IMG/VR virus record: IMGVR_UViG_3300043426_000266
Span: 62,001-126,000 of that record
DNA: 64,000 nt
Direction: 5' to 3' (one strand)
The position numbers and the translations under genes are program-made. Positions 24,208-58,804 of this stretch are shown one piece after another. A model generated the notes under the pieces. It worked only from the letters and a program-made list of their open reading frames with translations. It searched no databases and was not told where the DNA came from. How positions within the stretch are numbered: position 1 is the first letter of the stretch; every line of letters begins with the position of its first letter.

Positions 24208-24408
24208 TTATACTCCAGCTTCTTTAAAGATACTATTTAGAATATGGGCACCGATTGAATCCGCAAGTGCTTCTTTGGCATCTTGGTTCTGTTCAACATA
24301 GACGTAAGATGGGTCAATGCGCATCATGACTTCTACACCCAATTCGATCATATTCCCTACGATACACGTGTTTGTCGCATGGACATTTTGTTGATTTAAA
24401 TCACTCAT
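24208..24408 (-). CDS. hypothetical small protein
   Basis: 66-aa ORF coupled to both neighbours. Confidence 0.7.
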   Translation of the reverse strand: MSDLNQQNVHATNTCIVGNMIELGVEVMMRIDPSYVYVEQNQDAKEALADSIGAHILNSIFKEAGV

Positions 24409-33500: not shown

Positions 33501-36500
33501 GAAACTTCGTGAAGAGAACCGTACTAAGATTGTGGCGGAGTTAGCCAAAGCGTTAGGATCACAGTTCTACAAAAAAGCTAAGGATCGTTTAAAGACATTC
33601 TTAAATGGTGGAACTGAAGATACAGCAACCACAGATAACTTAAAGCAGGTTTATAACTTTGGTAAAAACAAGGTTACTGGTGCTTACGGTGAAATTAAAA
33701 ACTTTGCTGGAGAGCAGTTTAACAAGACTGCTTTAAAAGGGCGTTATGACCAAGCCAAAGGTTTGATGCAAAAAGCGTGGAAAGAACTTGCGATTGACAT
33801 CTACCTGGTCGTGAATCCTGCATTGGTTCGTTTAAGTGCTGCTGGGTTTGAATCTGGTATGTACATTGACAAAGCCACTGGTCGTGTACTTGAATCTCAT
33901 CATGACATTAATGGTGAAGTTGTCAATACTCAAGGTAACATTGTTTTAACCGATGAAGAGTTAGGGAAAGGTTTACTGGATAAAGAAGGTAATCGAATTA
34001 ATCCTAGTTCTTTAGCACGTTATCGCAATATTGCTCGTAACAAAGCCGTTGAAGCGTATAACAAGTATGCCAAGAAACATGTTGATAAATACCTTAACAA
34101 AGGTGCAGATCTTCTTTTAACTGCTGCAGAACGTTGGCAGCGTATGTTTAAAGAAACTGTGATTGACGTCTATGTCACTGGGAAGGGTGATAAACCTATA
34201 TTGACCGCAGTTGGTTTTAGAGCAGGTGAATATCTCAGCACTGTGAGTAAGAAAGTACTTACGGATTACTTGGACATTGATGGTCCGGTAATGACGAAGA
34301 ATGGTCAATACCTTTTGCTTGCAGAAGACTTGGGTAACTTAATCGATAAAGATGGGAAACCAATTAAACCAACGAAGCTTGGTGGGATTGGACAACGTCT
34401 ATTCGGTATTGCTTCTGAAGCTTTGGGGTTAGGTCGAATCAAAACCTTCGGTAAGAAGATGTTTGATAAGGCTAAAGCGTTCTCTGCGAAGAAGATGGCT
34501 GAGAACTTCAGCAAAGCTGGAGCAGATGCTGTTGATGTTTACTTGGCAGACAAAATGGATACTCCTACGCTTTACGCAAAAGAGTTCCGCGAGGGTTTAT
34601 ACCTTGATCAGGCAACTGGTGAAAAACTTGCCAACCACTACATGATTAAAGGTCCAGTCATTAAAACATTGGACAATGGTTCTGTTGAAGTGGTGTTAAC
34701 TGCTGAAGATCTTCAAAAAGGTTTTGTTGATGCAGAAGGTAAACCGTTACCAGTTGTTAAAGTAGATTTCCTCCGTGGTTCATTCTTTAAAGGAATGTTG
34801 GGGAATAGACTGGATGGCGCTAAAGGACGAGTTAAAAACTTCTTGAACCGTTTCAAGAAAGAGAAAGCTGAGGAAGTAACTGAAGAAGCTCCTACCCAAA
34901 CAGGCAGCAACAAGGTGATCTACTATAAAGACCCACTTGATGGTGGATTGCTTCCTGCATTTGATTTAGATGCGATTAAGAACTGGGAACTTTACCAGGT
35001 TAATCTTGATACTGATAATCCAGATGCAACAGTGTCTCGTATCTCTGACCTCTCTGAGATCCAAAAAGGTTTTACTGTATACCGTCTGAAAACTGGCAAG
35101 TCAGCCCCTGCCGATAAACCAATGACCGTTGCTTTATTGAACAGTTTAGGTTTTATTGCTGTACGGAGTTCAGTGAACCAAGGTGTTTGGTTTGATGAGA
35201 AAGGGAAGAAGTTCAAAGCTGAGAAGAAGAAACCTGAACAACAAGGTGGACAAAGTAAGTTTTCGAAACTGAAAGGTAAACTTGGTTCTAAGCTTGGTGG
35301 ATTAAAAGACAAGTTGAAAGGTAAATTCACTGATGAAGAAGGTAACTTCCGAATTGGAAGTTGGCAGTGGAAACGCAAGAAGAAAGAGGAGGATGGTTGG
35401 TTTGGTCGTCTTGGTTCTGCGTTAGGTCTTGGGAAGAAGAAGGGGGATGAAAATCCTGCTAAACCTAGTTGGCTAAAAACCATGTTTGGTTGGTTTAGTA
35501 AAAAATTCATCTTCATGGGATTAGCCGCTGCTGGATTAGTTAAAGCCTTAGGTGCTAAAATTAGTTTAGGTTCAATGGCTGCTGGTTTATTAGCTGTTAA
35601 AGGAATTAGCTGGGCTCTTAAAAAGTCATTGACCGGTTTGGTGTTTAAACCACTAATGAACTTGATTCCATGGCTTGGTACTAAAATCATGGGCGCTGTA
35701 CGCGGTCGTGGTATGATGGGTAACGGCATAGGTGGTCTTGGTAAAGTTGCTCGTATTGGTGGTGCTGCTTTAGGCGCACATGCTATCTACAAGGGGCTAA
35801 AAGGCGAAGAGCAGTTTGATGAGAATGGTGATCCAATCGTAGATTCGGAAGGCAATGCTGTAGTTAAGAAAGACTACATGGGTGCTGCCTTGGGTGCCGT
35901 TGGTGTTGCTTCTATGATCCCTGGTGTTGGTGGCATGGCAATGTCCGCTGGGGCTGCCTTATTAACTAACCCAGTTGGTTGGGCTATTCTTGGTGGGGTT
36001 GCGGTTGGCGCTGCGAGTTATTGGCTAGGTAAGAAAGCATTAGGTTGGTGGAAAAAAGGGAACGCTTTAGAAGAAAGTCCTTTATCTGCTTTCCGTATGA
36101 TTCAATATGGTTTTAGCCCAATTGATGATAAAACAATGCAACCAATTCTTCAGTTAGAAGGATACTTATCTGGAATGCTTGTTAGTGGTAATGATGGTAT
36201 TAATATCAGTAATCAAGTTGACCCTAATGGGGTATTTGGTATTTTTGGTTTGAAATATGGAACTGGAGATGCTGAACGTAATAAGTCTTTCTTAGCGTGG
36301 TTCCTGGGTCGTTTTAAACCGGTTTACTTATCGTACGTCAAACAGATGAACGCGATTAAGAAAACTTACAAACTTGATGGCATTGATACTAGTGTTACTG
36401 CTGCTGATCGTCTGTCTATCTTAGAGAATGTACACTTTAAGAACCAGACTGACATGAACCCGTATAACATTCCAGTATCACCTTTTGAAGATCCGGATGA

Positions 36501-39396
36501 AACTGATTACGACTTTGATGATGTTTGTGATAAGTACGATGATGTTAAATCAATTCTTGGAGAACTTGTTCCTGCAAGTGATAAATCTAAGGAGGAAGCA
36601 AAAGCATCTGAGGAGAAGAAAGAAGGTGGTTTGCTTGATACGGCGAAGAAGGCATTAATGTTTGCTAGTCCACTAGGCGCTGCTGTCATGGGGCTTAAAT
36701 GGACAGCGAAGAAGATTGGTGATGTTTTTAACGTTAGTATTGGTGGAATGCAAAAATCCTTTTCTACAATGATGGATAAAGCATTTAAATCTTTAAGTGA
36801 AAAATGGGAAGGAGTGAAAGGTTGGGCGAAAAATGCATGGAACTCTATAACAAACTTAGATGCCGGTGGCATGGCAGATGCTGCTAAGGACGTCGTGATG
36901 AATGCCACTCCAGTTGGCTTAGCAGCACAGGCAGCTGGAGCAGTTGGGTCAGCAGTTGGGTCAGCAGTTGGTGGCGCTGGAGATGTAATCTCCAAGGGGT
37001 GGAGAAGTTTAACTGGTAAGACTGGTGAAATGCAAAAAGCAGTTTATGAGTCGTTCATCCGAGCTGGACTAACACCTAACCAAGCAAAAGCAATTACTGC
37101 TGAAGTTGGGCGAGAAAACGACTACAACCCGAGTACTATATTTGGTACCCACGTTGACCCTGCCTCCGGGGGTAAAGCGATTAATAACATCGGGATGATT
37201 TCTTGGAATGGTCCACGAGCTGAGAAATTAGCTGCGCTACTTAGAAATCAGGGGTTGTTAGACGCGAGTGGGAAGATGGTCCAAGGTCAAGCTGCTCTAG
37301 ATGTTCAGACTAAGTTTGCTGTTTCTGAAATGAAAGGACCTTATGCTAAAGGGTTAACTAATTTCTTAAACAATCCTAATGGTGATCCTGAGAGTTTTGC
37401 TCAAGAGTTGGGTAAAAAGTATATCGTTTGGGCTTATGGTCAGACTAAACTTAAGAATGGTAAAAGTTTTGATTGGAAAGCTCATGACGATAAACGTCGA
37501 AAATATCTACAGTCTATTAGTGCTTCCGTAGGCACATCACCGGCGGGTTCAACCGCAGCTGGAGCAATACCACCAACCATCGCTAAGCCGGGGATTATGT
37601 CTGGTGCAGCAACAGGTGTGGTGGCTGGAGCAAATGCTGCGGTAACCGGTAATGCTGGTAGTGTGAAAAATTCATCAGTACCGATGATTGGTATTGGTGG
37701 AACTGATCCTACTAAAGCAGCGGGGGCAAAAGCGCAAGCCATCTCTAAATCCACCCCAATAAATGCTAAGGATGCCCAGTGGGACTTGGATAAAATCGCT
37801 GAATTTGTTAGTAAAAAAACCAAAGGTACTTTTAAACCTGGTTTAAAAATCGGACAATGTGCCTTGTATGTTCGACAAGCTCTGCAAGCTGGAGATTTAC
37901 AGAAACAAATTCCTGCTGGTTTAGGCGATGCGTGGCAACTTGGTGCTAAATTAAAAACCATGGGCTGGGCTGTAGTTGGCAATATTAACACTATTAAGCC
38001 ATTAAAGGGTGATATTGGTTTCTTTGATAAAGGTTCTTATATGTCTGGAGGTAAACCTACACCGTATGGTCACGTATGTATCTTTACTGGAAGCGCTTGG
38101 ATTTCTGATTTTACTCAAGCCTCAATTTACCCAGGTAGCCAAATGGCGAAACAAGGAGTTAAACATGAAATTCTGCGTGCTGTAAAATCTATCAGCAATG
38201 GTAAACCGGCAATGGTAAACGTAGGTAGCGAAACTCAACCTAGTCAAAATCCTGAAGCCATGGGGACTACATCTGCACCACAGAAACCAGCTACCAACAC
38301 AGGTAATGCTTCTGCTCCTGCGGCTGGTGTGGTAGCTGGGGCTAAAGCAAGCGTTGCAGCTAAAGGCTCCTCAAGTGTACCGATGATTGGTATCGGAGGA
38401 AGTGATCCGACTAAAGCTTCAACATCTGCCACAGGCGCTGTTAAGGTAGCAGCCGCTGCTGCTGGTGGTGATCTAAAAGTCCTACTGGCTAAGGCCACTC
38501 CTGAACTTGTTGCTGCTGGCAAATTACACCATAGGCTTAAAGATAAAAAAGTTACATTGGCTGGAATGAATGAGACGTTTATGACTTTATTCTGGGCGAT
38601 GTTGGGTGAAGCTAGACAGAAGGGTTTAGGTGTTGTTCAGATTAATGAAGGTGTTCGTACATTGGCAGAGCAGAGAAGACTGTACGCGTTGTTTTGTGCT
38701 GGTAAAGGTCCGTTGGCCGCTAAGCCTGGTACGTCTCGTCATGGGTTCGGACAAGCAATGGATATCAATACTGTAAATGCTGATGAACTTGATAAAAAAG
38801 GCTTATTGGCAAAATGGGGTTTCAGTCGCCCTCTCATGAAGAGACTTGCAAGTGGGAAGTTGACAGAGACTTGGCACATCGAGAACAAATTTGTTAAACG
38901 GGATGGATGCCCTGCTCCTCAGATTGAAAAAGCCAAGGAAACCACTAGCGGCGCCATGGCGCCGACTGGAACCCCTTCCGCTAACACGTCAACCGCTAAC
39001 GCGCCAGCCGCTAACGCGCCAGCAGCCAACACGGGTAATGCTTCTGTTAACGCCGTGGTTAATGCTGCTGGCTATGGAATGACAAACACTGTTTCTAATC
39101 AACAACAAACCGACTCAATTAGTTCTTCGTCAGCTAATGATATTTTAACAAGACAGTTGGAGGTACAAACTCAGATTAGAAATGCGGTTGTTGAGTTAAA
39201 AGACTTTATTGTTAAACCCGTTTCTGCAGAAGAACGACAACGTTTAGAGGAGATGAAAAAACCTGCTGATATGCAATCTATTGGAGAGCAAATCGGCAAG
39301 TCAATTACTGAGGCAATTGGAAACAAGTTGTCTGGTAATAAAAGTAATTTAGATCTTCAAAAACCAAGGGCTCCAATTTCAGTGAGTAAGTTTTAA
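30511..39396 (+). CDS. tail tape-measure-like lysin (phiKZ gp181-like) with phage-tail lysozyme, CHAP-like and M15 peptidase domains
   Basis: 2961 aa, divergent from vRNAP beta'. Lysozyme-like AITAEVGRE...GMISW; CHAP-like GQCALYV...GHVCIF; M15 SRHGFGQAMD...ETWH. Confidence 0.85.
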   Translation: MAKRDIDDFEELDLGLDDDMGYEDNNRPSSDRKASIFSRSKNYAKSHYKAKFEDRNERKRLLKQAIPGSYGSAVDLAFDMKDDYDSIKYEVSKEWQKSKGPFKKLLKSQEGTLRALRLKKLADWANEEDRGRYAEEAVDQDDALTANLMGDFTKYKNSPAEKEKAATDKVDQKEKESDQEFKSKTLSATLKGTANLTSILKELQNQTSYQDQITFQYQRKNLEFNIRNFIESKKQTELLRTYKEEAISELKEIHKNTALPDAVKINQSELAGQIFKEKMLGNVASYFDGKMSTMRRKIVSRVKDRLLELTRDMGTNIEGMLEAASSQQESGGGSLLGMFGQMFADSKLDKPYNYVTGKATKYIRNKLGANTKINKFGKGLNSLIANAGTLGNEALITGKTGNKLLDGLSSFLGLNQAATTRSTRLRNSLSDNLDTATYMDVKFKQTVERVIPGWLSLIHKETYLTRIGSNSDKDYKKKSWDWDKEDFDNDQNVKDRAFTKVFKKENIEQFSMAMENVLRVYDPIAFLTLDARNELKDWIYNKIQSSRSPSFYNLMLEINTFKNKATRAQLIQLANFAADIHEEDLEYAEEGLLSEGKLIMRRPKYAEWAKKAKPYIDELASRPLFDINELMRIANTEQGKVFEEMGLVTRDGSGNLDMSVDYEKKIVRKMTSMDYKQIAKLKEGEGQSYRNNRGQQETRNRMELDNENMQDTIDDWLNSDARIDDKTYAILQTLLNNDTLDARSKKANEKKIKNILSSLIFQTNDEIREGKKSGRIATRAAGGIIPSFAKGGKNRKKKGKKSYLEAYKGGSTGNAPVDEGQLAIVHGQEFVTDATTTENNETLLELMNKFKAPVFLPDGKVNPVYYKAMGYEDEEEFRKDQSQQLRLAKKKLRADKFSAGARTGSAWVANKVKGLEGRDNSKTKEKIKAAASEITEEGKRIFDEAYKALNGMSEQQLQSVYSKLMTATDSSIFNASENALIASDASTHKKVLTVIKAKLREENRTKIVAELAKALGSQFYKKAKDRLKTFLNGGTEDTATTDNLKQVYNFGKNKVTGAYGEIKNFAGEQFNKTALKGRYDQAKGLMQKAWKELAIDIYLVVNPALVRLSAAGFESGMYIDKATGRVLESHHDINGEVVNTQGNIVLTDEELGKGLLDKEGNRINPSSLARYRNIARNKAVEAYNKYAKKHVDKYLNKGADLLLTAAERWQRMFKETVIDVYVTGKGDKPILTAVGFRAGEYLSTVSKKVLTDYLDIDGPVMTKNGQYLLLAEDLGNLIDKDGKPIKPTKLGGIGQRLFGIASEALGLGRIKTFGKKMFDKAKAFSAKKMAENFSKAGADAVDVYLADKMDTPTLYAKEFREGLYLDQATGEKLANHYMIKGPVIKTLDNGSVEVVLTAEDLQKGFVDAEGKPLPVVKVDFLRGSFFKGMLGNRLDGAKGRVKNFLNRFKKEKAEEVTEEAPTQTGSNKVIYYKDPLDGGLLPAFDLDAIKNWELYQVNLDTDNPDATVSRISDLSEIQKGFTVYRLKTGKSAPADKPMTVALLNSLGFIAVRSSVNQGVWFDEKGKKFKAEKKKPEQQGGQSKFSKLKGKLGSKLGGLKDKLKGKFTDEEGNFRIGSWQWKRKKKEEDGWFGRLGSALGLGKKKGDENPAKPSWLKTMFGWFSKKFIFMGLAAAGLVKALGAKISLGSMAAGLLAVKGISWALKKSLTGLVFKPLMNLIPWLGTKIMGAVRGRGMMGNGIGGLGKVARIGGAALGAHAIYKGLKGEEQFDENGDPIVDSEGNAVVKKDYMGAALGAVGVASMIPGVGGMAMSAGAALLTNPVGWAILGGVAVGAASYWLGKKALGWWKKGNALEESPLSAFRMIQYGFSPIDDKTMQPILQLEGYLSGMLVSGNDGINISNQVDPNGVFGIFGLKYGTGDAERNKSFLAWFLGRFKPVYLSYVKQMNAIKKTYKLDGIDTSVTAADRLSILENVHFKNQTDMNPYNIPVSPFEDPDETDYDFDDVCDKYDDVKSILGELVPASDKSKEEAKASEEKKEGGLLDTAKKALMFASPLGAAVMGLKWTAKKIGDVFNVSIGGMQKSFSTMMDKAFKSLSEKWEGVKGWAKNAWNSITNLDAGGMADAAKDVVMNATPVGLAAQAAGAVGSAVGSAVGGAGDVISKGWRSLTGKTGEMQKAVYESFIRAGLTPNQAKAITAEVGRENDYNPSTIFGTHVDPASGGKAINNIGMISWNGPRAEKLAALLRNQGLLDASGKMVQGQAALDVQTKFAVSEMKGPYAKGLTNFLNNPNGDPESFAQELGKKYIVWAYGQTKLKNGKSFDWKAHDDKRRKYLQSISASVGTSPAGSTAAGAIPPTIAKPGIMSGAATGVVAGANAAVTGNAGSVKNSSVPMIGIGGTDPTKAAGAKAQAISKSTPINAKDAQWDLDKIAEFVSKKTKGTFKPGLKIGQCALYVRQALQAGDLQKQIPAGLGDAWQLGAKLKTMGWAVVGNINTIKPLKGDIGFFDKGSYMSGGKPTPYGHVCIFTGSAWISDFTQASIYPGSQMAKQGVKHEILRAVKSISNGKPAMVNVGSETQPSQNPEAMGTTSAPQKPATNTGNASAPAAGVVAGAKASVAAKGSSSVPMIGIGGSDPTKASTSATGAVKVAAAAAGGDLKVLLAKATPELVAAGKLHHRLKDKKVTLAGMNETFMTLFWAMLGEARQKGLGVVQINEGVRTLAEQRRLYALFCAGKGPLAAKPGTSRHGFGQAMDINTVNADELDKKGLLAKWGFSRPLMKRLASGKLTETWHIENKFVKRDGCPAPQIEKAKETTSGAMAPTGTPSANTSTANAPAANAPAANTGNASVNAVVNAAGYGMTNTVSNQQQTDSISSSSANDILTRQLEVQTQIRNAVVELKDFIVKPVSAEERQRLEEMKKPADMQSIGEQIGKSITEAIGNKLSGNKSNLDLQKPRAPISVSKF
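33793..34760 (+). repeat. three internal protein repeats at exact 123-aa periodicity in the lysin
   Basis: IDIYL (33793), IDVYV (34162) and VDVYL (34531) are each 369 nt apart, with a shared G.Y...T....DI.G.V....L..E.L..G..D..G.. pattern. Confidence 0.75.
36940..36975 (+). repeat. 12-nt tandem repeat (AVGS) in linker
   Basis: GCAGTTGGGTCA x2 + GCAGTTGGTGGC. Confidence 0.7.
38978..39035 (+). repeat. 15-nt tandem repeat (ANAPA/ANTST) in linker
   Basis: CCGCTAACACGTCAA CCGCTAACGCGCCAG CCGCTAACGCGCCAG CAGCCAACACGGG. Confidence 0.7.
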
Positions 39397-50063: not shown

Positions 50064-50996
50064 ATGAAACAGTCACCTTATCAAACATTCAGTTGCTCCG
50101 GTTATACTCTTGAAAAAATCATTCAGGAGCTTCAAGCAGAAGCAACTATAGATCTACACTCATCTATGCAAACCGCTAATAATGAACTGGGTAATCCGGT
50201 TCGTTTGTTATACACAAATTTAAAATTCAACCCGAAACCTTTTGCTCATCCATTAGACATTGTTGAACACACCGGGCAACGTCGTGATGAACAAAAAACT
50301 GTTGTTCAAGACATTAGACCTTTTACAAAATCATCTCAACAACACGGGGTGGTGGTTACAAATTATGCTGAACATGCTTTGGCAATGCGGCGAGCATTAC
50401 TACATTCAATCTGGGTAACTTCAGATTCTTATTTATTGCGAAATGTTTGTAGTCCGCTCATGTGTATTTTTGCTTCTTGGGTTTCTGAATCGATTGCAAA
50501 ACGTTTAGACATGGATGCAATCACTCAATTAAAAATAGCAAACATTGCAGCTTGGTGGTTTTGGTGTCAATACAACACCCCTGAAGATTTAACTCAGGAA
50601 ACCCGTTCTAAGATTTATAAACTCATCGCTGATTCTACTCGAGCGTCTTTTGATACCGTAGAAAGTGATTTAGAAGATTTAGAATACTTTGATGACATTG
50701 AAGGGTTTTGTGCGGCGGTTAAAGAAAGTACAGATAATCCTAGAATTAAACACTTAGATCCTGGCGCTCTAATTCAACTGACTTCGGGTGTGTGGATGGG
50801 TGTTCACTCTCGAGAAATCATGAGTGTTTGTTTGGAGTACCCTCCGTACCTAGCATCAGTTGTTTACTCAGCGCTCCATGATCGTGGGATGCGAAGTACA
50901 CCGTTTACTAAACTCGTTCAACGGTTTATCACTCGACCAGACATTAAAGGTTTTAAGACGTCAATTGATTATCTAGCAAAGGTTAACGTTGGGTAA
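50064..50996 (+). CDS. virion structural protein (phiKZ gp28-like)
   Basis: 310 aa, divergent from the sheath; F.HP, QD.R.F, LEYPP...A.VY motifs. Confidence 0.7.
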   Translation: MKQSPYQTFSCSGYTLEKIIQELQAEATIDLHSSMQTANNELGNPVRLLYTNLKFNPKPFAHPLDIVEHTGQRRDEQKTVVQDIRPFTKSSQQHGVVVTNYAEHALAMRRALLHSIWVTSDSYLLRNVCSPLMCIFASWVSESIAKRLDMDAITQLKIANIAAWWFWCQYNTPEDLTQETRSKIYKLIADSTRASFDTVESDLEDLEYFDDIEGFCAAVKESTDNPRIKHLDPGALIQLTSGVWMGVHSREIMSVCLEYPPYLASVVYSALHDRGMRSTPFTKLVQRFITRPDIKGFKTSIDYLAKVNVG

Positions 50997-51031
50997 TTAT
51001 TAAACATTATTTTGTCCACATAGAGGTTGTC

Positions 51032-53767
51032 ATGAATCCATTCGTATTGAATACTATTTTAGCAGACTCTTGGTTTGCAGCAGGGCTGGGGTATAATCAC
51101 ACTATTAAACCATCCCGTGTATCACCGCCGGGTGGATTCAAAGGAACTGCAAGGGTTGCTGGTCGGTACTATGAACCGCCAGCAACAAATGTCCGTAACG
51201 CTTCTTTTCATTATTATCACATTGGCCAGATGCCAACACACTTTCTAGGGATGTTTAATGTTATTCCTGGTAAGTGGTATAGTGTTGAGGATTTAATCAA
51301 TAAAGATAATCATCTCATTGATGCAGTACTTACAAACGGGGTTACCTTATCACCCCGCCATGTCTTTATTATGAAAAGTCCGATTGATTGTAACTTAATC
51401 GTTGCGACTTTAGTTGTTCCAGGTTTTGACTATGGTGAAACGGTTATTGCGTTAGCGCAAGAAGAATTTCCGGTTTTCCTAGTGACCTCTGAGGATGGTG
51501 GTTCAATACCGTTGGACGGAGGTAAACGAGTTACTGCTTCTATTAATATCGTAGAGCTTGTTCTACATTTTAGTTTTAATCACCGAGCTAATGCAGCTGA
51601 TATAAGACATCCAGCACAATGGGATTTTCTCTCGCATTCTAAGATTGTTCAGTATGATTGTGCAATGCTAGCTACAACCTCGGAAGTCACCAGTTTTTTA
51701 GACAAGTACACAGATCAATTATTCGCCGCTTGGGTTATTGCGAACGGGAAGATCATGACGGTTGCTTCTGCACTTGCTGCAGCGTCTACATTAGTGGGGA
51801 AAGAACTTTGTGTACATTATGACCGCACAATTAAGGTAAAACAATTTCATAATTTCGGATCAAGCGCCACAATGACGTCGAATGAAAATGGTGTTAGAAA
51901 ACACATCATTAACATTGGTGCTGCTTTGGAATCCCCGCATGATGTTTCATTGTTTCTAGGAATAGGTAACGACACAACATTTAAAGGACTCTCTTTAGAT
52001 AATAGACACATTGAGCTTGTTCAGCAAGTTACCAATCATCATCTTGCAATCAATGATGTTCAATTGAATGAATTAAGATTAAAACATGGTTTCTTAAATA
52101 CAGGGGAAGACCTTGTTATTTATGCCGTTATTCGAAAAAGCACACTCAGTAGAATGGGTGGTTCTCAGTACGCTCGGTTAGATGTTTTAACTGGATTAGG
52201 TACAACGCTTAAAAACAACTTCCTCTCTGACGCAGGGTTAATCCCTGAGTGGCAAGGTATATCGCTAGAACTTAATGAATATAATGTTTTGCGAAATAGT
52301 CCTGTCCGTTTATTTAACGAAAACAGAATTGTTGACGGTTATGGCTACGTTGGTTTGTCAAGATTGTTTACGCCAGCGTTAATTAAAGGTACTACATTTA
52401 CAAGACATGGTAATACTTACTCTAAGTTTAAGACCAGTATATTAAGTCGAGAACGTACTAAGAAATTACCGACCCGTTCCGAGGTTGAAGTTATCGCTTA
52501 TGGTTTAGATAATAAACTAGAAACCTCAAAATACCTTACGCAGAATATCGCAGGAATGGTTACTTTCAAAAATAAAGATTTAAAATACATTGAATCTAAT
52601 TTAGTTAGACAATTGTTTGGAACACTCAAAGGTAACCATAAACTTTACGGGAATCAAGTTTTAAACGCTGATGCTTTGTTTTATGGATGGCAATGTTACG
52701 TCTGTGAAAAAGAGAATGGTGTGGCTAACCAGGAATGGTTCCGTGCAGTAAAAGATCTTCATTACACCATTGCAACAATTGGAGTAAATAAAACCATTGT
52801 TTGGAATACAAGTGTTTTGAATTTAAATAACCTTGTGGGATGTTTTACCATTGGTGGGGATGTGAGTCACGTTGTGACGTATGTTCGATACATCAATCTT
52901 CGCAGAGGTTACATGAGTGTTAATTTTGTAACTGATGTTGACGGGCTAATGCCACTACCTTCTGAGCGGGTTGACGTATGGCTGGCTGGAGGTTTGTTAA
53001 TTGAAGGGATTGATTATTTGGTGGGTCGAGATCAAATCATTATCTTTAAGAAGTTTACTTCAATTAATGATGAAGTGAGAATACGTTTATCTGGGTTACC
53101 TCTAGATGGTTCTCATTCACAACCACTGGAGACTGGTTATGTTGACCGTGGTAAAATATCATTTGATCATAAGTCAAGAATATTTAGAGGTAAGGAAGTT
53201 CAAATAAACATTGGTGGAGAGATCCAACACGCTTCAACGATCTGTTATGGTCATGAAACTGAGAATGCTTTAACTGGGTATAATGGTAAACCCTATCAAA
53301 TCAAAGAACATATCCAACCGCTTGAAGGCTACACAGATGCAAACACCTTTGATGAAGTTGACCGAATGCATGTGATGGAAAATGTGATTGTAGATACGCT
53401 TAATACACTTGCGCCAATCAACTATGTTAGAGAAACGACAACACTGGCTTTGGGATTGCATCATCAGGTTGTTTCAGTTTTTCTCAACGAGATCATTTAT
53501 CAGATCTTAAATGAAGGTTTGATCGCAACACAAATATCTGGCACGTATACAAAAGCGATGACTGATGGTTGGTTTGCTCCGCTTTTATATTTGCTTGAGT
53601 ACGATGTTAGTCTGAACCCTATTTTGAACATAAACTTTATTACAGTTAATCCACATGAAAAAACAACCATAAATGTTAACACACATCAATTAAGATTATT
53701 TAATTTTGTAAACCAAAATTATCTTAATAGTAAAGTAACAATGACTGGGCGTTTCACTGTGGTGTGA
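51032..53767 (+). CDS. large virion/baseplate structural protein (phiKZ gp27-like)
   Basis: 911 aa between the gp28-like gene and the terminase; YHIGQ and LNGxxLIEGIDY-type motifs. Confidence 0.65.
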   Translation: MNPFVLNTILADSWFAAGLGYNHTIKPSRVSPPGGFKGTARVAGRYYEPPATNVRNASFHYYHIGQMPTHFLGMFNVIPGKWYSVEDLINKDNHLIDAVLTNGVTLSPRHVFIMKSPIDCNLIVATLVVPGFDYGETVIALAQEEFPVFLVTSEDGGSIPLDGGKRVTASINIVELVLHFSFNHRANAADIRHPAQWDFLSHSKIVQYDCAMLATTSEVTSFLDKYTDQLFAAWVIANGKIMTVASALAAASTLVGKELCVHYDRTIKVKQFHNFGSSATMTSNENGVRKHIINIGAALESPHDVSLFLGIGNDTTFKGLSLDNRHIELVQQVTNHHLAINDVQLNELRLKHGFLNTGEDLVIYAVIRKSTLSRMGGSQYARLDVLTGLGTTLKNNFLSDAGLIPEWQGISLELNEYNVLRNSPVRLFNENRIVDGYGYVGLSRLFTPALIKGTTFTRHGNTYSKFKTSILSRERTKKLPTRSEVEVIAYGLDNKLETSKYLTQNIAGMVTFKNKDLKYIESNLVRQLFGTLKGNHKLYGNQVLNADALFYGWQCYVCEKENGVANQEWFRAVKDLHYTIATIGVNKTIVWNTSVLNLNNLVGCFTIGGDVSHVVTYVRYINLRRGYMSVNFVTDVDGLMPLPSERVDVWLAGGLLIEGIDYLVGRDQIIIFKKFTSINDEVRIRLSGLPLDGSHSQPLETGYVDRGKISFDHKSRIFRGKEVQINIGGEIQHASTICYGHETENALTGYNGKPYQIKEHIQPLEGYTDANTFDEVDRMHVMENVIVDTLNTLAPINYVRETTTLALGLHHQVVSVFLNEIIYQILNEGLIATQISGTYTKAMTDGWFAPLLYLLEYDVSLNPILNINFITVNPHEKTTINVNTHQLRLFNFVNQNYLNSKVTMTGRFTVV

Positions 53768-53774
53768 GGTTGCG

Positions 53775-55940
53775 ATGAACGTTATTCTTTACGAAGAGGA
53801 TTGGGGTCGCTACCCTAGTGCTACAGTACATTATGAAACACAAAATAGATCATGGGTCGAGTTAGCCAAGAAGCTGGAAATACAAGGGGTTAAAAATAAT
53901 AAGTTTTTTTTAGCTCTTTTAAACCCGGCGCTACGTTACGTTGATCCATGGAATGAAGATTTAGACGAAATAACTAAAACAGCAGTTGCAACCGAGATTA
54001 AACTTAATCCCTGGTATTTCTTTAGGGAGATTGCTAGGTTTGATAAATACGAGTTTAATGGTAAAAGATATTATTTAAATGCTAACCGTGGCAACATTGC
54101 CGCATGGTGGTGTTTCTTTAACCACCAGGACTATAACTTAACCCAACCACGTCAGACGGGTAAATCAACATCATCTAACTGGTTAGTCGTTTGGTTACTG
54201 TTCTTCGCTTATGAGAACTCTGACATTATGTTGTTAACCAAAGACAACACACTAAGACAGAATAACGTTAGAGCAATTAAAACGTATCGTGATTTATTAC
54301 CTGACTATTTAAACCCCACAACGAAAAAGGATATTAACAACTTAATCTCCGTGAGTTGTGTCGCATTAAGTAATAAACTCTATACCGCGGTTTCTCAAAA
54401 CTCTAAAGCGGATGCAGATAAAGTCGGTCGTGGTTTCTCTTGTAAGACCTATATTATCGATGAAGGCCCCTATGTTGACTATCTAGAAGTTTCGCTTAAT
54501 GCGATGCTCCCAGGGGGCGATGCGAAGCAAGCGGAAGCGGCTGAGAAGTTTGAACCCTATGGGAACATCTACACGACGACGTCAGGGTCTAAATCCGATG
54601 ATTCTGGTGCTTACTACTATGACATGGTTACAAACTGTCTTCAGTGGTCTGAACACCTGTACGATCTGAAGAACATTGATGCATTAAAAATAGTGGTGGA
54701 TAAAGCTGCGATTAATAAGAATCTTATCAATATTGTCTTTAACCATCGCCAGTTAGGTTATACCGATCAGTGGCTAATTGAGAAGTTGAAAAAGAATGGT
54801 GCGACTGGTGCTAAGGCGAATAAGGATTACTTTAACATCTGGGATGATGGTGCAACTGAATCTCCATTAGATAAAGATCTGGCTAAGGTCATCAAGTCTT
54901 CTCGCAAAGAACCTTGTTTTATTGAATTTACCAAAGAAGGTTATGCCATTAATTGGTATGTTCCAAAGCGTGAAGTTGAAATGCGAATGGCTGTCGGTAC
55001 GTTTGTCCTTGGTCTAGATACTTCAGACGCGGTAGGTCGTGATGCAATTGCAGTGACTTTAACTGATGTAAGTAATTTAGAAAACGTAGCAACGTTATTG
55101 GTTAAGGAAACTAATCTGATTCATTTTGGATATTGGTTGGTCGACTTTTTAGTTAGATATAAAAAGGTGACCCTGGTACCTGAACGTAAAAACCAAATGG
55201 CAACATTGATTGACCTATTGTTAATTCGATTGACGATCAATGGGGAAGATCCTTTTAAACGAATCTTCAACCGAGTTGTTCATGAGGATAAGTGGAAAGA
55301 GAATCTGTACAAACCTTTTCACAATCGCATTCATCGTGATCTAGATGCTTATACTGAGGTGAAAGACCAATTCGGGTACTCGACTGCAGGTAATGGCGAA
55401 TACTCTCGTAACGCGCTTTATACACAAACGTTGATCCTTGCGTGTGAGTATGGTGGAACTGTAATCAATGACGATGGTACAATTAAGGAAATCTTGGGAC
55501 TACAACGTAAAGGAAATCGGATCGACCATGCGAATGGTTCTCATGATGACCGAGTAGTTTCCTGGTTACTTTGTAATTGGTTATTGATTCACAGTAAGAA
55601 TTTAAGTTATTACGGAATTGTTAATCCATTGTCTAAAACCATGGACTATCGTAATAAGTTAAAGTTAGAAAAAGGGGATAGTTCTCTTGCGTTTAAGATA
55701 AGAGAACAAGAAGAGCAGTCAAAACTTAAGGATGAGATTGAAAACTACTTAGTGTTATTAAAGTCTGTTAAAGATGATTTACTTAGCAGTCAATACGAAG
55801 CTAAACTTCGCAAGCTAGAATCCCAATACACTGGAACTGCATTTGGAGCCTTAACGGTAACTGATCTAGTGAAACAGGCGAAAACTGAGAAGTTTAAGCG
55901 GCGGGTGAATCACCGTCGCCAGATGGAGGGTGCTTATTAA
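53775..55940 (+). CDS. terL: terminase large subunit (phiKZ gp25-like)
   Basis: Walker A PRQTGKS, Walker B YIIDEG, nuclease LGLDTSDAVGRD and HDDRVV. Confidence 0.93.
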   Translation: MNVILYEEDWGRYPSATVHYETQNRSWVELAKKLEIQGVKNNKFFLALLNPALRYVDPWNEDLDEITKTAVATEIKLNPWYFFREIARFDKYEFNGKRYYLNANRGNIAAWWCFFNHQDYNLTQPRQTGKSTSSNWLVVWLLFFAYENSDIMLLTKDNTLRQNNVRAIKTYRDLLPDYLNPTTKKDINNLISVSCVALSNKLYTAVSQNSKADADKVGRGFSCKTYIIDEGPYVDYLEVSLNAMLPGGDAKQAEAAEKFEPYGNIYTTTSGSKSDDSGAYYYDMVTNCLQWSEHLYDLKNIDALKIVVDKAAINKNLINIVFNHRQLGYTDQWLIEKLKKNGATGAKANKDYFNIWDDGATESPLDKDLAKVIKSSRKEPCFIEFTKEGYAINWYVPKREVEMRMAVGTFVLGLDTSDAVGRDAIAVTLTDVSNLENVATLLVKETNLIHFGYWLVDFLVRYKKVTLVPERKNQMATLIDLLLIRLTINGEDPFKRIFNRVVHEDKWKENLYKPFHNRIHRDLDAYTEVKDQFGYSTAGNGEYSRNALYTQTLILACEYGGTVINDDGTIKEILGLQRKGNRIDHANGSHDDRVVSWLLCNWLLIHSKNLSYYGIVNPLSKTMDYRNKLKLEKGDSSLAFKIREQEEQSKLKDEIENYLVLLKSVKDDLLSSQYEAKLRKLESQYTGTAFGALTVTDLVKQAKTEKFKRRVNHRRQMEGAY

Positions 55941-55951
55941 GGGGAAGTGAA

Positions 55952-56335
55952 ATGTTTAACTTTGTTTATTTCATTTTAGAATTGTTTTGGAACACCACCG
56001 TTAAGTATCGCTATCCGATTGACTACCATGTAGAATTAACACGCAACAACTACATGGTAGTCAAACAAGTCCCGATTGGTAATAAAGCTAAGAGACTTGT
56101 TTTCATCTCCAAACAAGTTTCTTATACTCGGGTAGATCGATTAAGTTTAAAGAAGGTAAGAAGTTATCGGGTTGAGGTAATTGATTCATGGGTTGGTCCA
56201 GACATGAAATCTAAAATTTACATCATCCCTGAATTATGTAGTGGGATTTTTAGTAGAACGAAAATCCCTCACGTGTGTGCTATTAACTGTATTATTGCAA
56301 AATTCATAGAGGAAGATGTGAATGACCTCCGATAA
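55952..56335 (+). CDS. hypothetical protein
   Basis: 127 aa downstream of the terminase. Confidence 0.7.
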   Translation: MFNFVYFILELFWNTTVKYRYPIDYHVELTRNNYMVVKQVPIGNKAKRLVFISKQVSYTRVDRLSLKKVRSYRVEVIDSWVGPDMKSKIYIIPELCSGIFSRTKIPHVCAINCIIAKFIEEDVNDLR

Positions 56336-56936
56336 GATTGAGTATATACTTAGCCCAGTGAATGCGGTTGTGTTTACTGACTGGGATAATCTTTTGGGCT
56401 TTCCGGTAGAGAAGATCCTACCGGAATATTTTTTTATTGATCGAGCTAAAAATCTAGTTGGGGTAACAACTGTTCAAATAGCGATGATTGAGTTTGATAA
56501 GATCATGGGTTCAGTAAATGAACTATTGTCTTTAGAAAACATTCCTTCTGACGTCTTAGACGATTTACTTGCTGAAGGAGAGTCTATTCAACCTAAAACT
56601 TTCTTTGAGAGAGTTAATCCTTTATCTAAAATTAAAACAAAAGAGAAGGTGTTTGACCCTACTCGAATTCTAAAACTCATCTACGCGATTAATCGAGTAC
56701 GATTTGAATTATTCTCTTTTGTGATTGTACAGCTATCAAACTTACAAGCTAAACAAATTAAAGAGTTATATCAGCAAGATCGTATGAAGAATTATGAAGG
56801 GTTACATCTCGCTTATCGAGACTTACTTAACCGTACTTCTAAGAAGGATAAGGAAGCACATTACAAAGCGAATCCTAACTTCATTAGACACCTTCCCGAG
56901 GATGGGTTAGTGGTGCATGGCACAACAGTAAACTAA
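56322..56936 (+). CDS. hypothetical protein
   Basis: 204 aa, GTG start after GAGG. Confidence 0.7.
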   Translation: MTSDKIEYILSPVNAVVFTDWDNLLGFPVEKILPEYFFIDRAKNLVGVTTVQIAMIEFDKIMGSVNELLSLENIPSDVLDDLLAEGESIQPKTFFERVNPLSKIKTKEKVFDPTRILKLIYAINRVRFELFSFVIVQLSNLQAKQIKELYQQDRMKNYEGLHLAYRDLLNRTSKKDKEAHYKANPNFIRHLPEDGLVVHGTTVN

Positions 56937-56957
56937 GGGCAGGTTATCTGCCCTTTT
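56935..56957 (+). terminator. intrinsic terminator
   Basis: AAGGGCAG-GTTAT-CTGCCCTT followed by TT. Confidence 0.7.
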
Positions 56958-56963
56958 CACTTT

Positions 56964-57359
56964 ATGAAAAAGGATATAAACATGGATCTTAATAAAAATC
57001 AAATCATTGATACTTTAAAAACATTTTTAGGGGTTGATAGATTTCAACACTCTACTTTTTGGGTGGCTGGTAAGGTCTTTGAACTAGCGAATAGAGAAAG
57101 AGTTGTAGGTACGATTGATTATATTTCATTGTATGTTGATTCTAAAACATTTGACTCTTTGGTAGGTGAAGTAGGTTATACTTGTAACTTTAGTAAAGAA
57201 GTTACTTTATGGATTGATGTGGATGATTATCCTATTAAGTTATTTAAGGAAGAAATGAGTACACGTAACACGTATGTTAAGAATAGATTAAAATCTATTT
57301 CTTTATCTAACTTAGATACGTTATTTGTAAAAAGTTACGATGGTATACCTATATTATGA
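56964..57359 (+). CDS. hypothetical protein (possibly degenerate nucleotidyltransferase fold)
   Basis: 131 aa; FWVAG...TIDYISLYVD weakly resembles minimal NTases; catalytic pattern incomplete. Confidence 0.55.
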   Translation: MKKDINMDLNKNQIIDTLKTFLGVDRFQHSTFWVAGKVFELANRERVVGTIDYISLYVDSKTFDSLVGEVGYTCNFSKEVTLWIDVDDYPIKLFKEEMSTRNTYVKNRLKSISLSNLDTLFVKSYDGIPIL

Positions 57360-57860
57360 ATTACTTTATCAGATGATCGAAAGGTTGGCTGATAAACTGG
57401 GGTCGGGCAGGCGTGGTTGGTTTTGAAGCTTAAGAGACTTAGGATTATAATTATAGAATATAATTATCTACTAGAGATAAGGATAAGGGGTACACGTAGT
57501 AAGTACCCCGATATATTCTTTATTTCCGAAATTATAAATTAGAAACATATTAGACGTTTTTGTAAAGTTTTTACTTTCTCTTGTTTTGCTTTTATAAATG
57601 GGAAATATGCTTTGCTATTTCCCTTCCTTATAGAGAAGTAACCTTGTTGTTACTTCTCGGTTAGTTTAATTAGAATTGCTCAGTAAACAGCAATTCTAAT
57701 TAATAGAGTTTATTAAATTTAGAAAAGAATATATCCCTACTTACAGGGGATATATTCTTCTTTATGCTGATTGAGTTTATTTTGTGTTTATCCCCCTTGG
57801 GATAGGGTTGCGAAATTTTATATGAGTTTAAATTTATCTAATTAGATTGAGAGAAGAGTC
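57360..57860. other. 500-bp non-coding region with at least 7 hairpins
   Basis: Inverted repeats at 57365-57396, 57487-57509, 57600-57623, 57633-57658, 57666-57703, 57725-57759 and 57789-57804. Confidence 0.75.
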
Positions 57861-58607
57861 ATGAGTGAAACTGGGTTTGTTTATTACTATAGTACCAAGG
57901 AATTGAAACGTTTAAAGAGTGCAGTTGGAAAAGGGGTTACTAAAGAACAAGAAGAGGAAGGGGAGGAATTTGGAGATCGGAGTTTAGGGGGTAAGCTTGC
58001 AGGAGGAGGACGTTATATTCGAGACATTCTAACTTATGGGAGTTTACCTTTACGGTTCTTTGGGTTTGACCATAAACCTGAACGGGGTATTGCAATGAGT
58101 TTAGATCCTATCCCTTTAGACATTGCTAAACTTTATGGAGGGAAACATAAGTTCTGGAAGAGTGGAATAACCCTATACCAATACAAAGTTATTATTGGGA
58201 GTAGTAGCCTTGAGGGGATTAAAGGAAACATTCAATTACATAAAGACAATGGAATGCCTTATCGCATTGTTGGAAGTAAACCCGTTCGAGATTTGATTTA
58301 TGAAAAACAAGAATGGAATTTGGATGAAATTGACGAAAAGCAGATTAAAAAGAATGAAAAAGAAATTGTTGCTTTAGAGAAAAGCTTAGGGTTTTATGGG
58401 TTTTGGGGATTGGACTTAATTCATACGGTTGCAAAAGCCCGTAGAGACATTAAGAAGACCATTGAAGAGAACGTTAGTTTATTAACGAAACGAAAGCAGG
58501 AGAGTGTGCTTTATGGGGAGTTATATCCTTGGGTTCCACACCTTGTTTTGTATACTGGATTTGTAGGCATTGGATTTGATTCAGTTGAGGTTATTAAATT
58601 GAAATAG
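57861..58607 (+). CDS. hypothetical protein of a family recurrent in phiKZ-like phages
   Basis: YYYS...L.S, SLDPIP...H.FW..G..LYQY.V, VPHLVLY pattern (recalled family). Confidence 0.6.
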   Translation: MSETGFVYYYSTKELKRLKSAVGKGVTKEQEEEGEEFGDRSLGGKLAGGGRYIRDILTYGSLPLRFFGFDHKPERGIAMSLDPIPLDIAKLYGGKHKFWKSGITLYQYKVIIGSSSLEGIKGNIQLHKDNGMPYRIVGSKPVRDLIYEKQEWNLDEIDEKQIKKNEKEIVALEKSLGFYGFWGLDLIHTVAKARRDIKKTIEENVSLLTKRKQESVLYGELYPWVPHLVLYTGFVGIGFDSVEVIKLK

Positions 58608-58730: not shown

Positions 58731-58804
58731 CAGACATACATTATTTACATGTAAATCAAATCATTTTAGATTAAATTTATTTCAGATATACACTATCTAA
58801 TTGA
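58731..58804 (+). promoter_or_regulatory. two tandem early promoter motifs
   Basis: CAGACATACATTATTTACATGT (58731) and CAGATATACACTATCTAATTGA (58783). Confidence 0.6.

What the first reader, a model, noticed from the sequence alone, without database searches (positions are those of the whole stretch)
57360..57860. Largest non-coding gap is a dense hairpin array with an alternative long-range pairing
Seen: 500 bp with no ORF and no early-promoter motif, holding at least 7 hairpins. These include a GAAA-tetraloop stem (57365-96), GGGGTAC/GTACCCC (57487-509), 8-bp (57600-23), 10-bp (57633-58), 15-bp perfect (57666-703) and 13-bp (57725-59) stems. In addition, GTAAGTA...ATATATTCTT (57499-57520) is complementary to AAGAATATAT...TACTTAC (57725-57744). 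That long-range helix is mutually exclusive with two of the local hairpins and would enclose the three middle ones. Inference: a large structured or switchable ncRNA, a replication origin (cruciforms in AT-rich DNA), or a packaging-related site, given its position just after the terminase operon.
Basis: partly seen in the sequence, partly recalled or inferred. Interest (0 to 1): 0.6.

Follow-up and report, generated by a model that had tools for sequence, protein, structure and literature searches.

The report
Conserved hairpin array after jumbo-phage terminase operon
The 500-base gap is a real, evolutionarily conserved string of independent RNA hairpins that separates the late packaging operon from the next genes of an uncultivated phiKZ-like giant phage. 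The proposed long-range "switch" helix is not conserved and is energetically disfavoured.

Summary
Window 57360-57860 has no ORF conserved across relatives, no tRNA, no Rfam family and no early-promoter motif. It holds at least 8 local hairpins and has the densest perfect-hairpin content of the whole 205-kb phage genome.

Three related phage lineages from metagenomes keep the array. Stems change by pair-preserving substitutions: 4 of 10 pairs in the 57633-58 stem, one C-G to A-T swap in 57725-59, and G-U intermediates in 57365-96 that pair only in plus-strand RNA. The core 57537-57703 is 98.8% identical to a relative whose flanking genes are only about 78% identical.

The claimed alternative helix (57499-521 with 57724-44) is absent in both other lineages. 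It is 12 kcal/mol worse than the local hairpins, with pairing probability at most 1e-4.

The last hairpin carries this phage's standard hairpin+TTATG tail, which resembles phiKZ's terminator motif and late-promoter TATG. The other hairpins are atypical, with 6-9 nt loops and AT-rich stems.

GC skew shows no origin signal. Genome termini and expression could not be tested.

Best reading: a plus-strand RNA boundary region for 3'-end formation, insulation and re-initiation. It may yield a stable short RNA. Its function is not demonstrated.

The parts
56935..56966 (+). Context: the phage's standard hairpin+TTATG module just upstream of the 125-aa gene, the last gene of the late terminase operon.
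   Evidence: The stem covaries (C-G to T-A in L009; other stem sequences in L011 and L004), while the tail with TTTATG and the AAGGA ribosome site is conserved.
57354..57359 (+). End of the 125/131-aa gene. A TATG overlaps the TGA stop codon.
   Evidence: The 16 nt around it are identical in all three lineages. Whether this TATG acts as a promoter was not tested.
57365..57396 (+). H1: 13-14 bp hairpin with a GAAA tetraloop, starting 6 nt after the stop codon.
   Evidence: 92.9% of cells paired, 4 one-sided changes through G-U and 1 double change. The G-U pairs form only in plus-strand RNA.
57398..57425 (+). G-rich, C-poor tract conserved in all lineages.
   Evidence: Function unknown.
57447..57467 (+). 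A/T-only hairpin: 9 bp here, 11 bp in the L004 lineage.
   Evidence: In the L004 lineage its loop is found in both orientations (AAA or TTT).
57487..57509 (+). GC-rich hairpin (7 bp, 8 bp in L011) followed by a T-rich tail.
   Evidence: Present in the window and L011 lineages, absent from the L004 lineage. Possible terminator of the 125-aa gene's transcript (inferred).
57537..57599 (+). Unstructured U-rich stretch, 96.8% identical to L011.
   Evidence: Unexplained; it could be a promoter or a protein-binding segment.
57600..57635 (+). H3 (8 bp, 8-nt loop, 57600-23) plus a 12-nt tail that is conserved in all lineages and contains TTAT.
   Evidence: Identical in L011.
57633..57658 (+). H4: 10-bp hairpin with the invariant loop CTTGTT.
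   Evidence: 100% paired, 4 of 10 pairs changed on both sides against the L004 lineage. Loop and flanks are conserved. Single copy in the genome.
57666..57703 (+). H5: 15-bp perfect hairpin whose loop ends in TAAAC.
   Evidence: The L004 lineage has a 14-bp stem of different sequence at the same place, also with a TAAAC-ending loop. Single copy.
57720..57766 (+). H6: 13-bp hairpin 57725-59 (extended by 4 pairs including one G-U) followed directly by CTTTATG (TATG at 57763-66). This is the phage's standard hairpin+TTATG tail.
   Evidence: One C-G to A-T compensatory change in L011 and a G-U variant in L132/L133. The same motifs are described for phiKZ in PMC10914365 and PMC4666361.
57789..57804 (+). 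H7: 6-bp hairpin in the leader of the 248-aa gene.
   Evidence: The loop changes in L011 while the stem is kept.
57499..57521 (+). 5' arm of the proposed long-range helix. It is not a conserved feature.
57861..58607 (+). Downstream 248-aa gene of unknown function, absent from lineage L011.
   Evidence: No match in Pfam, NCBIfam or PDB sequences; one weak PHROG of unknown function.

Best explanation
The gap is the non-coding boundary between the late head/packaging operon (vertex protein, DUF7193, large terminase and three small genes, 50064-57359) and the next transcription units, which include early genes.

It is transcribed on the plus strand together with its neighbours by the phage's own RNA polymerases. 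It works at the RNA level as a chain of independently folding hairpins:
- **Operon end.** A GAAA-loop hairpin lies right after the stop codon, followed by several terminator-like stems. Together they define and protect the 3' end of the late transcript and stop read-through.
- **Restart.** The last hairpin plus CTTTATG is the phage's standard hairpin+TTATG module, which stops transcription and restarts it for the 248-aa gene.

As with short RNAs ended by terminators inside 5'UTRs in phiKZ, the region may also release a stable short structured RNA.

Shown: the hairpins, their conservation, their plus-strand RNA signature, the canonical tail, and the absence of a switch. Inferred: termination, insulation and any RNA product.
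For: **Phage type.**
- It is phiKZ-like: gp28-type vertex protein, DUF7193 and a terminase about 40% identical to phiKZ gp25.
- It encodes its own RNA polymerase beta and beta' pieces.
- It has a strong early-promoter motif found only on the plus strand.

**Standard module of this phage.**
- 49 hairpins share a GC-rich top, a 4-nt loop in 41 of 49, and a following TTAT(G).
- These resemble phiKZ's terminator motif with TTAT (PMC10914365) and its late-promoter TATG, where the G is +1 (PMC4666361).
- H6 carries exactly this tail, and H3 has a conserved tail containing TTAT.

**Structure is conserved.**
- H4 has 4 of 10 pairs changed on both sides and stays 100% paired.
- H1 has 4 G-U-mediated changes plus one double change.
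- H6 has a C-G to A-T swap in L011 and a G-U variant in L132/L133.
- All 5 stem substitutions between the window and L011 keep pairing. Paired positions changed at 5.1%, unpaired at 12.7%.

**Sequence constraint.**
- The core 57600-57703 is 100% identical to L011, against 64-88% in the flanking genes.
- L009 differs from the window at 26 sites in 2850 nt, only 1 of them in the gap.
- L132 and L133 differ by 2 events in the 445-nt gap, against about 1.6% elsewhere.

**Non-coding and plus-strand.**
- No ORF is conserved across the lineages.
- All neighbouring genes are on the plus strand.
Against: - Most gap hairpins do not match the phage's own terminator type. Their loops are 6-9 nt, their tops are AT-rich, and there is no U/T tail after H1, H4 or H5.
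- A simple terminator stack does not explain the near-perfect identity of loops and of the unstructured 57537-99 segment.
- H3, H4 and H5 are perfect Watson-Crick palindromes with no G-U, so they are equally compatible with a DNA-level role.
- Loop inversions in the L004 lineage show that such palindromes also act at the DNA level.
- There is no expression data of any kind.
Confidence: 0.45

Rival explanations
1. An independent, single-copy structured non-coding RNA gene. One version runs from H3 to H6, about 165 nt, with H6 as its terminator. Another is a roughly 400-nt RNA starting at the TATG that overlaps the stop codon. It would act in trans or bind a phage protein.
For: - Nucleotide conservation exceeds that of the terminase gene.
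- The loops of H4 (CTTGTT) and H5 (ending TAAAC) are invariant while their stems covary.
- The elements are single copy in the genome.
- A conserved 63-nt segment upstream of H3 could be a promoter.
- L011 keeps the whole array although it lacks the downstream gene.
- phiKZ makes abundant short intergenic and 5'UTR RNAs (PMC10914365).
Against: - No recognisable promoter: no early motif and no conserved TATG in front of H3 or H4 across lineages.
- No Rfam match.
- The modules are ordered differently in the L004 lineage.
- No conserved long-range or tertiary pairing, which argues for separate hairpins rather than one fold.
- Three hairpins tolerate loop inversion.
Confidence: 0.25
2. A DNA-level cis-acting site, either a replication origin or a packaging-initiation (pac) site. 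Perfect palindromes would extrude as cruciforms or single-strand hairpins and be recognised by replication or terminase proteins.
For: - It is single copy, AT-rich at 31% GC and adjacent to the terminase operon.
- H3-H5 are perfect Watson-Crick palindromes.
- Loop flips in three hairpins of the L004 lineage show that these palindromes form in DNA.
- Sequence conservation is strong.
Against: - No GC- or AT-skew inflection near genome position 119.4-119.9 kb; skew simply follows the coding strand.
- No iteron-like direct repeats.
- The G-U-mediated changes in H1 and H6 make sense only in plus-strand RNA.
- The distant relative L003 has no comparable array after its terminase, and in phiKZ the terminase operon ends without a comparable long gap in the annotation (its hairpins were not analysed).
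- Known pac sites of double-stranded DNA phages are not hairpin arrays (general knowledge).
Confidence: 0.12
3. An evolutionary by-product. Hairpin modules would be left behind by repeated gene gain and loss at a plastic junction, and kept perfect by intra-strand template switching rather than by selection for a specific function.
For: - The 248-aa gene is present or absent between lineages, and gene content downstream varies.
- A roughly 150-nt segment lies before H4/H5 in the window but after them in the L004 lineage.
- Loop flips show active palindrome dynamics.
- Comparable composite promoter-terminator motifs are tied to gene shuffling in T4-like phages (PMC4122927).
Against: - In three independent close comparisons the gap evolves more slowly than the neighbouring genes.
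- Homologous hairpins persist between lineages whose proteins are only 54-70% identical.
- The L011 deletion junction lies at a short microhomology, not at a hairpin module.
Confidence: 0.1
4. An RNA switch. The long-range helix 57499-521 with 57724-44 would alternate with the local hairpins 57487-509 and 57725-59 to control read-through into the downstream gene.
For: The complementarity is real: 7 plus 12 nt. A 12-nt long-range repeat occurs in only about 3% of shuffles.
Against: - The 12-nt arm is not conserved in L011 although both local hairpins are.
- The longest long-range repeat is 9 nt in L011 and 8 nt in the L004 lineage.
- The forced conformer folds at -71.8 against -83.9 kcal/mol, with pair probability at most 1e-4.
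- No riboswitch family matches.
Confidence: 0.03

Closest known systems
phiKZ intrinsic terminators with a 3' TTAT motif, and the phiKZ late promoter TATG (PMC10914365; PMC4666361)
   Same: This phage has 49 hairpin+TTAT(G) modules. The gap's last hairpin (57725-59 plus CTTTATG) carries that tail, and H3 has a tail containing TTAT.
   Different: Canonical modules have GC-rich tops and loops of 3-6 nt (4 nt in 41 of 49). The gap hairpins have 6-9 nt loops and AT-rich stems, and H1, H4 and H5 have no such tail.
Short structured RNAs of phiKZ made by terminators inside 5'UTRs or intergenic regions, such as the 71-nt and 141-nt species (PMC10914365)
   Same: Hairpin-terminated non-coding stretches between genes of a phiKZ-type phage. 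This is a plausible source of a stable small RNA.
   Different: There is no transcript evidence here. The array is far longer (about 400-500 nt, at least 8 hairpins) and shows no sequence similarity to phiKZ.
PeSL composite promoter-terminator cassettes of T4-like phages (PMC2839356; PMC4122927)
   Same: Hairpin plus promoter modules at gene boundaries in a region where genes come and go between close relatives.
   Different: PeSLs are a repeated family that serves as recombination points. H1-H5 are single copy, and the gene-deletion junction in L011 is not at a module.
REP/BIME arrays in 3' untranslated regions of enterobacterial operons (general knowledge)
   Same: Clusters of palindromic units after operons. 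They are credited with stabilising mRNA and attenuating transcription.
   Different: REPs are high-copy families with a shared consensus. Each hairpin here is unique in the genome.
Intergenic region of Ff (f1/M13) phages, with hairpins A-E (general knowledge)
   Same: A roughly 500-nt gene-free region made of consecutive hairpins that carries a packaging signal and origins. This is the model behind the DNA-site rival.
   Different: Ff phages have single-stranded DNA genomes in which hairpins form naturally. This is a 205-kb double-stranded DNA phage, and its G-U covariation points to RNA.

Membership tests
phiKZ-type hairpin+TTAT(G) terminator/promoter module | TTAT(G) within about 5 nt after the stem | tested here: met
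   H6 is followed directly by CTTTATG. H3 is followed by a conserved tail with TTAT at +4. H1, H4 and H5 do not meet this feature.
phiKZ-type hairpin+TTAT(G) terminator/promoter module | GC-rich stem top and a 3-6 nt loop (4 nt in 41 of 49 canonical modules) | tested here: not met
   Gap hairpins have loops of 6-9 nt and a top-5-bp GC fraction of 0-0.6, against a mean of 0.76 in canonical modules.
phiKZ-type hairpin+TTAT(G) terminator/promoter module | Transcript 3' ends and 5' ends map to the module | not testable with these tools
Riboswitch or RNA switch | Both mutually exclusive helices are conserved or covary in relatives | tested here: not met
   The long-range arm is rewritten in L011 and absent from the L004 lineage.
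Riboswitch or RNA switch | The alternative conformers have comparable stability | tested here: not met
   -71.8 against -83.9 kcal/mol, with pair probability at most 1e-4.
Known RNA families (Rfam 15) and tRNA/tmRNA | Covariance-model or ARAGORN match | tested here: not met
   No hit at gathering scores, only chance-level hits at E of 0.1 or more. No tRNA in the window or the genome.
Replication origin | Strand-composition (GC/AT skew) inflection at the site | tested here: not met
   Cumulative skew rises steadily through 119-120 kb and follows the coding strand.
Replication origin | Iterons or repeated initiator boxes next to an AT-rich unwinding element | tested here: not met
   Only weak two-copy direct repeats of 8-19 nt. 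The AT-richness (31% GC) is ordinary for this genome's intergenic DNA.
Packaging (pac) site | Preferred genome termini or a coverage step in virion DNA | not testable with these tools
   Reads were unavailable. The record's ends overlap, so the assembly is circular and gives no fixed end.
PeSL-like or REP-like repeated cassette | Many copies of one consensus across the genome | tested here: not met
   Only a self-match for the gap in its own genome. The loop and flank motifs of H4 and H5 are unique.
Small protein gene | An open frame conserved across relatives | tested here: not met
   No short ORF is shared by the three lineages. The in-frame extension past the stop codon is cut short in L011.

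The most novel reading that the evidence does not exclude
The core of the gap (about 57537-57766: a conserved U-rich lead, H3, H4, H5 and H6) is a single-copy functional element under stronger purifying selection than the terminase gene. It would be either a new structured non-coding RNA of phiKZ-like phages or a hairpin-based cis signal for packaging or replication, which have never been defined for this phage group.
Probability: 0.25. Interest if true: 0.6.

Novelty: new member of a known kind. Interest (0 to 1): 0.4.

Why it matters
Transcript boundaries, non-coding RNAs, origins and packaging signals of phiKZ-like jumbo phages are poorly known. This locus gives a concrete case to test. It is non-coding yet more conserved than the neighbouring terminase gene, and it has clear structural covariation.

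The analysis also defines this uncultivated phage's regulatory vocabulary: an early-promoter motif and 49 hairpin+TTATG modules.

It also shows that hairpin loops flip orientation within a phage population. That is a DNA-level mutational process rarely noted in phages.

If the element is only a terminator and insulator stack, it is ordinary biology. If it is an RNA gene or a cis site, it would open an experimental handle on jumbo-phage gene expression or packaging.

Tried and rejected
**Searches for relatives**
- DNA searches of the phage collection, both near and distant, found nothing.
- Protein-anchored scans of viral contigs found no close relative: only one distant relative, L003, 36% identical in terminase.
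- The scan of genome contigs found nothing.
- A 16-nt pattern scan of viral contigs returned only chance hits, checked by BLAST. A structured pattern returned none.
- Only three lineages exist in everything searched.

**Expression and termini**

**Flanking proteins**
- AlphaFold models of the 125-aa and 204-aa upstream proteins had pLDDT 31 and 45, too poor for a fold search.
- Pfam, PHROGs, NCBIfam and PDB-sequence searches gave no function for the flanking small proteins or the 248-aa protein.

**Ideas rejected**
- Stop-codon read-through: the in-frame extension is cut short in L011.
- A small peptide gene.
- A CRISPR-repeat mimic or other known RNA family.
- A kissing interaction between the H4 and H5 loops: by eye, only 3-4 bp are possible.
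- A host-type sigma-70 promoter at 57423-51: its -35 box is lost in L011, and the phage has its own RNA polymerases.

**Not used**

Full report
**Context**

The window is bases 62001-126000 of a 205,063-bp IMG/VR virus record with 38% GC.

The phage is phiKZ-like:
- A gp28-type vertex protein lies at 50064-50996, a DUF7193 protein at 51032-53767, and a large terminase at 53775-55940 that is about 40% identical to phiKZ gp25.
- A gp29-type protein is encoded nearby.
- The genome has its own pieces of multisubunit RNA polymerase beta and beta'.

All genes around the gap are on the plus strand. Upstream lies the late operon 50064-57359. Downstream lie a 248-aa gene (57861-58607) and then genes preceded by early promoters.

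- The 501 nt fold better than dinucleotide shuffles on both strands, with z = -4.1 and -6.5.
- In a genome-wide census of perfect hairpins with stems of 8 bp or more, I found 164, against 26-47 in shuffled genomes. The gap is the densest 500-bp stretch, with 5.
- There is no tRNA and no Rfam family, even at permissive thresholds.
- No ORF is conserved across relatives.

**The phage's own regulatory signals**

- Intergenic k-mer enrichment revealed an extended AT-rich motif ending in TTATTTAC, with about 22 good copies, all on the plus strand and upstream of genes. I take this to be the early promoter, by analogy with the AT-rich early consensus of phiKZ. None lies in the gap. The nearest copies are at 58736 and 59328.
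- A second family of 49 modules is a hairpin with a GC-rich top and a 4-nt loop (41 of 49), followed within a few bases by TTAT(G).
- That family resembles the conserved phiKZ terminator motif with its TTAT tail (PMC10914365).
- It also resembles the phiKZ late-promoter TATG, whose G is the start site (PMC4666361).
- One such module sits before the 125-aa gene at 56935-66. Its stem covaries between lineages while its tail is conserved.

**Relatives**

Exhaustive look-ups found only three lineages:
- **Window type:** L007 and L008 are identical to the window, and L009 is 99.1% identical.
- **L011:** a single NCBI metagenome contig whose genes are about 78% identical in nucleotides.
- **L004 type:** L004, L005, L012, L132, L133 and L137-L144. 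Its proteins are 54-69% identical to the window's.

All three lineages have a long hairpin-rich gap after the 125-aa gene.

**Conservation of structure**

- **H1 (57365-96):** keeps 13 of 14 pairs in each lineage, with four one-sided changes through G-U and one double change. Its G-U pairs would be A-C mismatches on the other strand, so this is a plus-strand RNA structure.
- **H4 (57633-58):** keeps 10 of 10 pairs, although 4 pairs are changed on both sides in the L004 lineage. Its loop CTTGTT and both flanks are invariant.
- **H5 (57666-703):** faces a 14-bp stem of different sequence at the same position in L004, and both loops end in TAAAC.
- **H6 (57725-59):** has a C-G to A-T swap in L011 and a G-U variant in L132/L133.
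- **Window against L011 overall:** all five substitutions within stems preserve pairing. Paired positions changed at 5.1% and unpaired positions at 12.7%.

**Conservation of sequence**

Window against L011, the flanking genes are 64-88% identical per 100 nt. Within the gap:

| Segment | Identity to L011 |
|---|---|
| 57537-57599 | 96.8% |
| 57600-57703 | 100% |
| 57725-59 | 94% |
| 57760-826 | 91% |
| 57400-57536 | 79% |

Two closer comparisons agree:
- L009 differs from the window at 26 sites in 2850 nt, only one of them in the gap.
- L132 and L133 differ by two events in the 445-nt gap, against about 1.6% elsewhere.

So the gap is under constraint at least as strong as the genes. I cannot exclude that the window-L011 core identity partly reflects a past recombination patch.

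**Modularity and DNA-level dynamics**

- Local alignment shows two blocks shared with the L004 lineage: 57344-57466 and 57617-57721.
- A roughly 150-nt segment (57467-57616) lies before H4/H5 in the window. A weakly similar segment lies after them in L004.
- L011 lacks the 248-aa gene altogether. Its junction is at a short microhomology, and it keeps the whole array.
- Within the L004-type population, three hairpins occur with their loops in both orientations while their stems are unchanged. This is the signature of palindrome-mediated inversion in DNA.
- The loops of H4 and H5 never flip.
- These facts argue for a chain of independent hairpins rather than one integrated fold.

**The proposed switch**

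- The complementarity exists, as 7 plus 12 nt.
- The 12-nt arm at 57510-21 is rewritten in L011, even though both competing local hairpins are kept.
- The longest long-range inverted repeat is 9 nt in L011 and 8 nt in L004. A 12-nt one arises in about 3% of shuffles of the window gap.
- Forcing the long-range helix costs 12.1 kcal/mol, and its pair probabilities are at most 1e-4.
- I regard the switch as refuted.

**Origin or packaging site**

- Cumulative GC and AT skew show no inflection at the gap.
- There are no iterons.
- The distant relative L003 has no comparable array after its terminase. In phiKZ the annotated terminase operon ends after two tiny ORFs and convergent genes, without a comparable long gap; its hairpins were not analysed.
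- These are weak negatives.
- The element is single copy, and H3-H5 are perfect palindromes, so a DNA-level role remains possible.

**Interpretation**

The evidence best fits a plus-strand RNA boundary region with three parts:
- A hairpin at the stop codon.
- Terminator-like stems that end and protect the late transcript and insulate the downstream early module.
- A canonical hairpin+TTATG module that restarts transcription.

Most hairpins are atypical for this phage's terminators. The core is also conserved far beyond what structure alone needs. A dedicated stable RNA or a protein-binding element is therefore a serious rival. phiKZ is known to produce short structured RNAs from such regions.

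None of these functions is demonstrated. The mechanism is inferred from anatomy and comparative data.

**Limits**

- There are only three lineages, so covariation statistics are weak. The shuffle controls are not probabilities.
- Perfect palindromes can gain "compensatory" changes in one step by template switching.
- There are no expression or termini data.
- The flanking proteins remain of unknown function.
No alternative genetic code was used and no reads were laid.

Noticed in passing
G000 genome 1-152 and 204912-205063 (outside the window): The two ends of the virus record are the same sequence, apart from the length of a poly-C run (13 against 10 C) and one SNP. The record labelled 'linear, 70% complete' is therefore a circular assembly of about 204.9 kb and is probably complete.
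   Followed up: partly
window 734, 10169, 17023, 41751, 42400, 58736, 59328, 62577 (and about 14 more in the genome): A strongly conserved AT-rich motif ending in TTATTTAC, usually followed by (A/G)TGAA, has about 22 good copies. All are on the plus strand and upstream of genes. It is presumably the promoter for the virion RNA polymerase (early genes).
   Followed up: partly
genome-wide; in the window for example 5105-33, 9158-93, 41693-720, 46635-64, 56935-55, 60412-35: 49 hairpin modules (GC-rich top, 4-nt loop, often CTAG-type) are followed by TTAT(G). Several are symmetric and serve both strands. They mirror the phiKZ terminator motif and the late TATG promoter.
   Followed up: partly
L004 1266-1290, 1396-1413, 1551-1577 and the same places in L132, L133, L137-L143: Three hairpins have their loops in both orientations among phages more than 97% identical (AAA/TTT; TCTA/TAGA; a 7-nt loop and its near reverse complement). 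These small palindrome-mediated inversions are the commonest kind of variation in that gap.
   Followed up: partly
window 57861-58607 against L011 3620-3670: The 248-aa gene of unknown function is absent from lineage L011, with the junction at a short microhomology. Another window-type contig carries different genes downstream of it, so this is a gene-content hotspot.
   Followed up: partly
window 56940 and 56950: L009 differs from the window at both partners of one base pair (C-G to T-A) in the hairpin 56935-55. This is a compensatory change within a 99.1% identical pair of phages.
   Followed up: yes
window 56964 against 56982: The ATG at 56964 is part of the TTTATG module. Gene callers on related contigs start the protein at 56982 (125 aa), 16 nt after the presumed start site and behind an AAGGA ribosome site. 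The 131-aa reading is probably too long.
   Followed up: partly
window 30511-39396: A 2961-aa ORF has a phage tail lysozyme domain and a VanY-type peptidase domain near its C-terminus. It is probably a giant virion-associated cell-wall hydrolase.
   Followed up: no
window 24405-28826 (minus strand); genome 161039-161218 and 172678-173016: There are matches to RNA polymerase beta (Rpb2_6) and beta' (Rpb1_2) domains in separate ORFs. This is consistent with the split virion and non-virion polymerases of phiKZ-type phages.
   Followed up: partly
window 57398-57425: A G-rich, C-poor tract right after the first hairpin is conserved in all three lineages within an otherwise AT-rich gap. Its purpose is unknown.
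   Followed up: no
protein P0034 (L004-type lineage): One population variant of the 125-aa protein is 131 aa long. A frameshift near its end reads into the first hairpin region.
   Followed up: no
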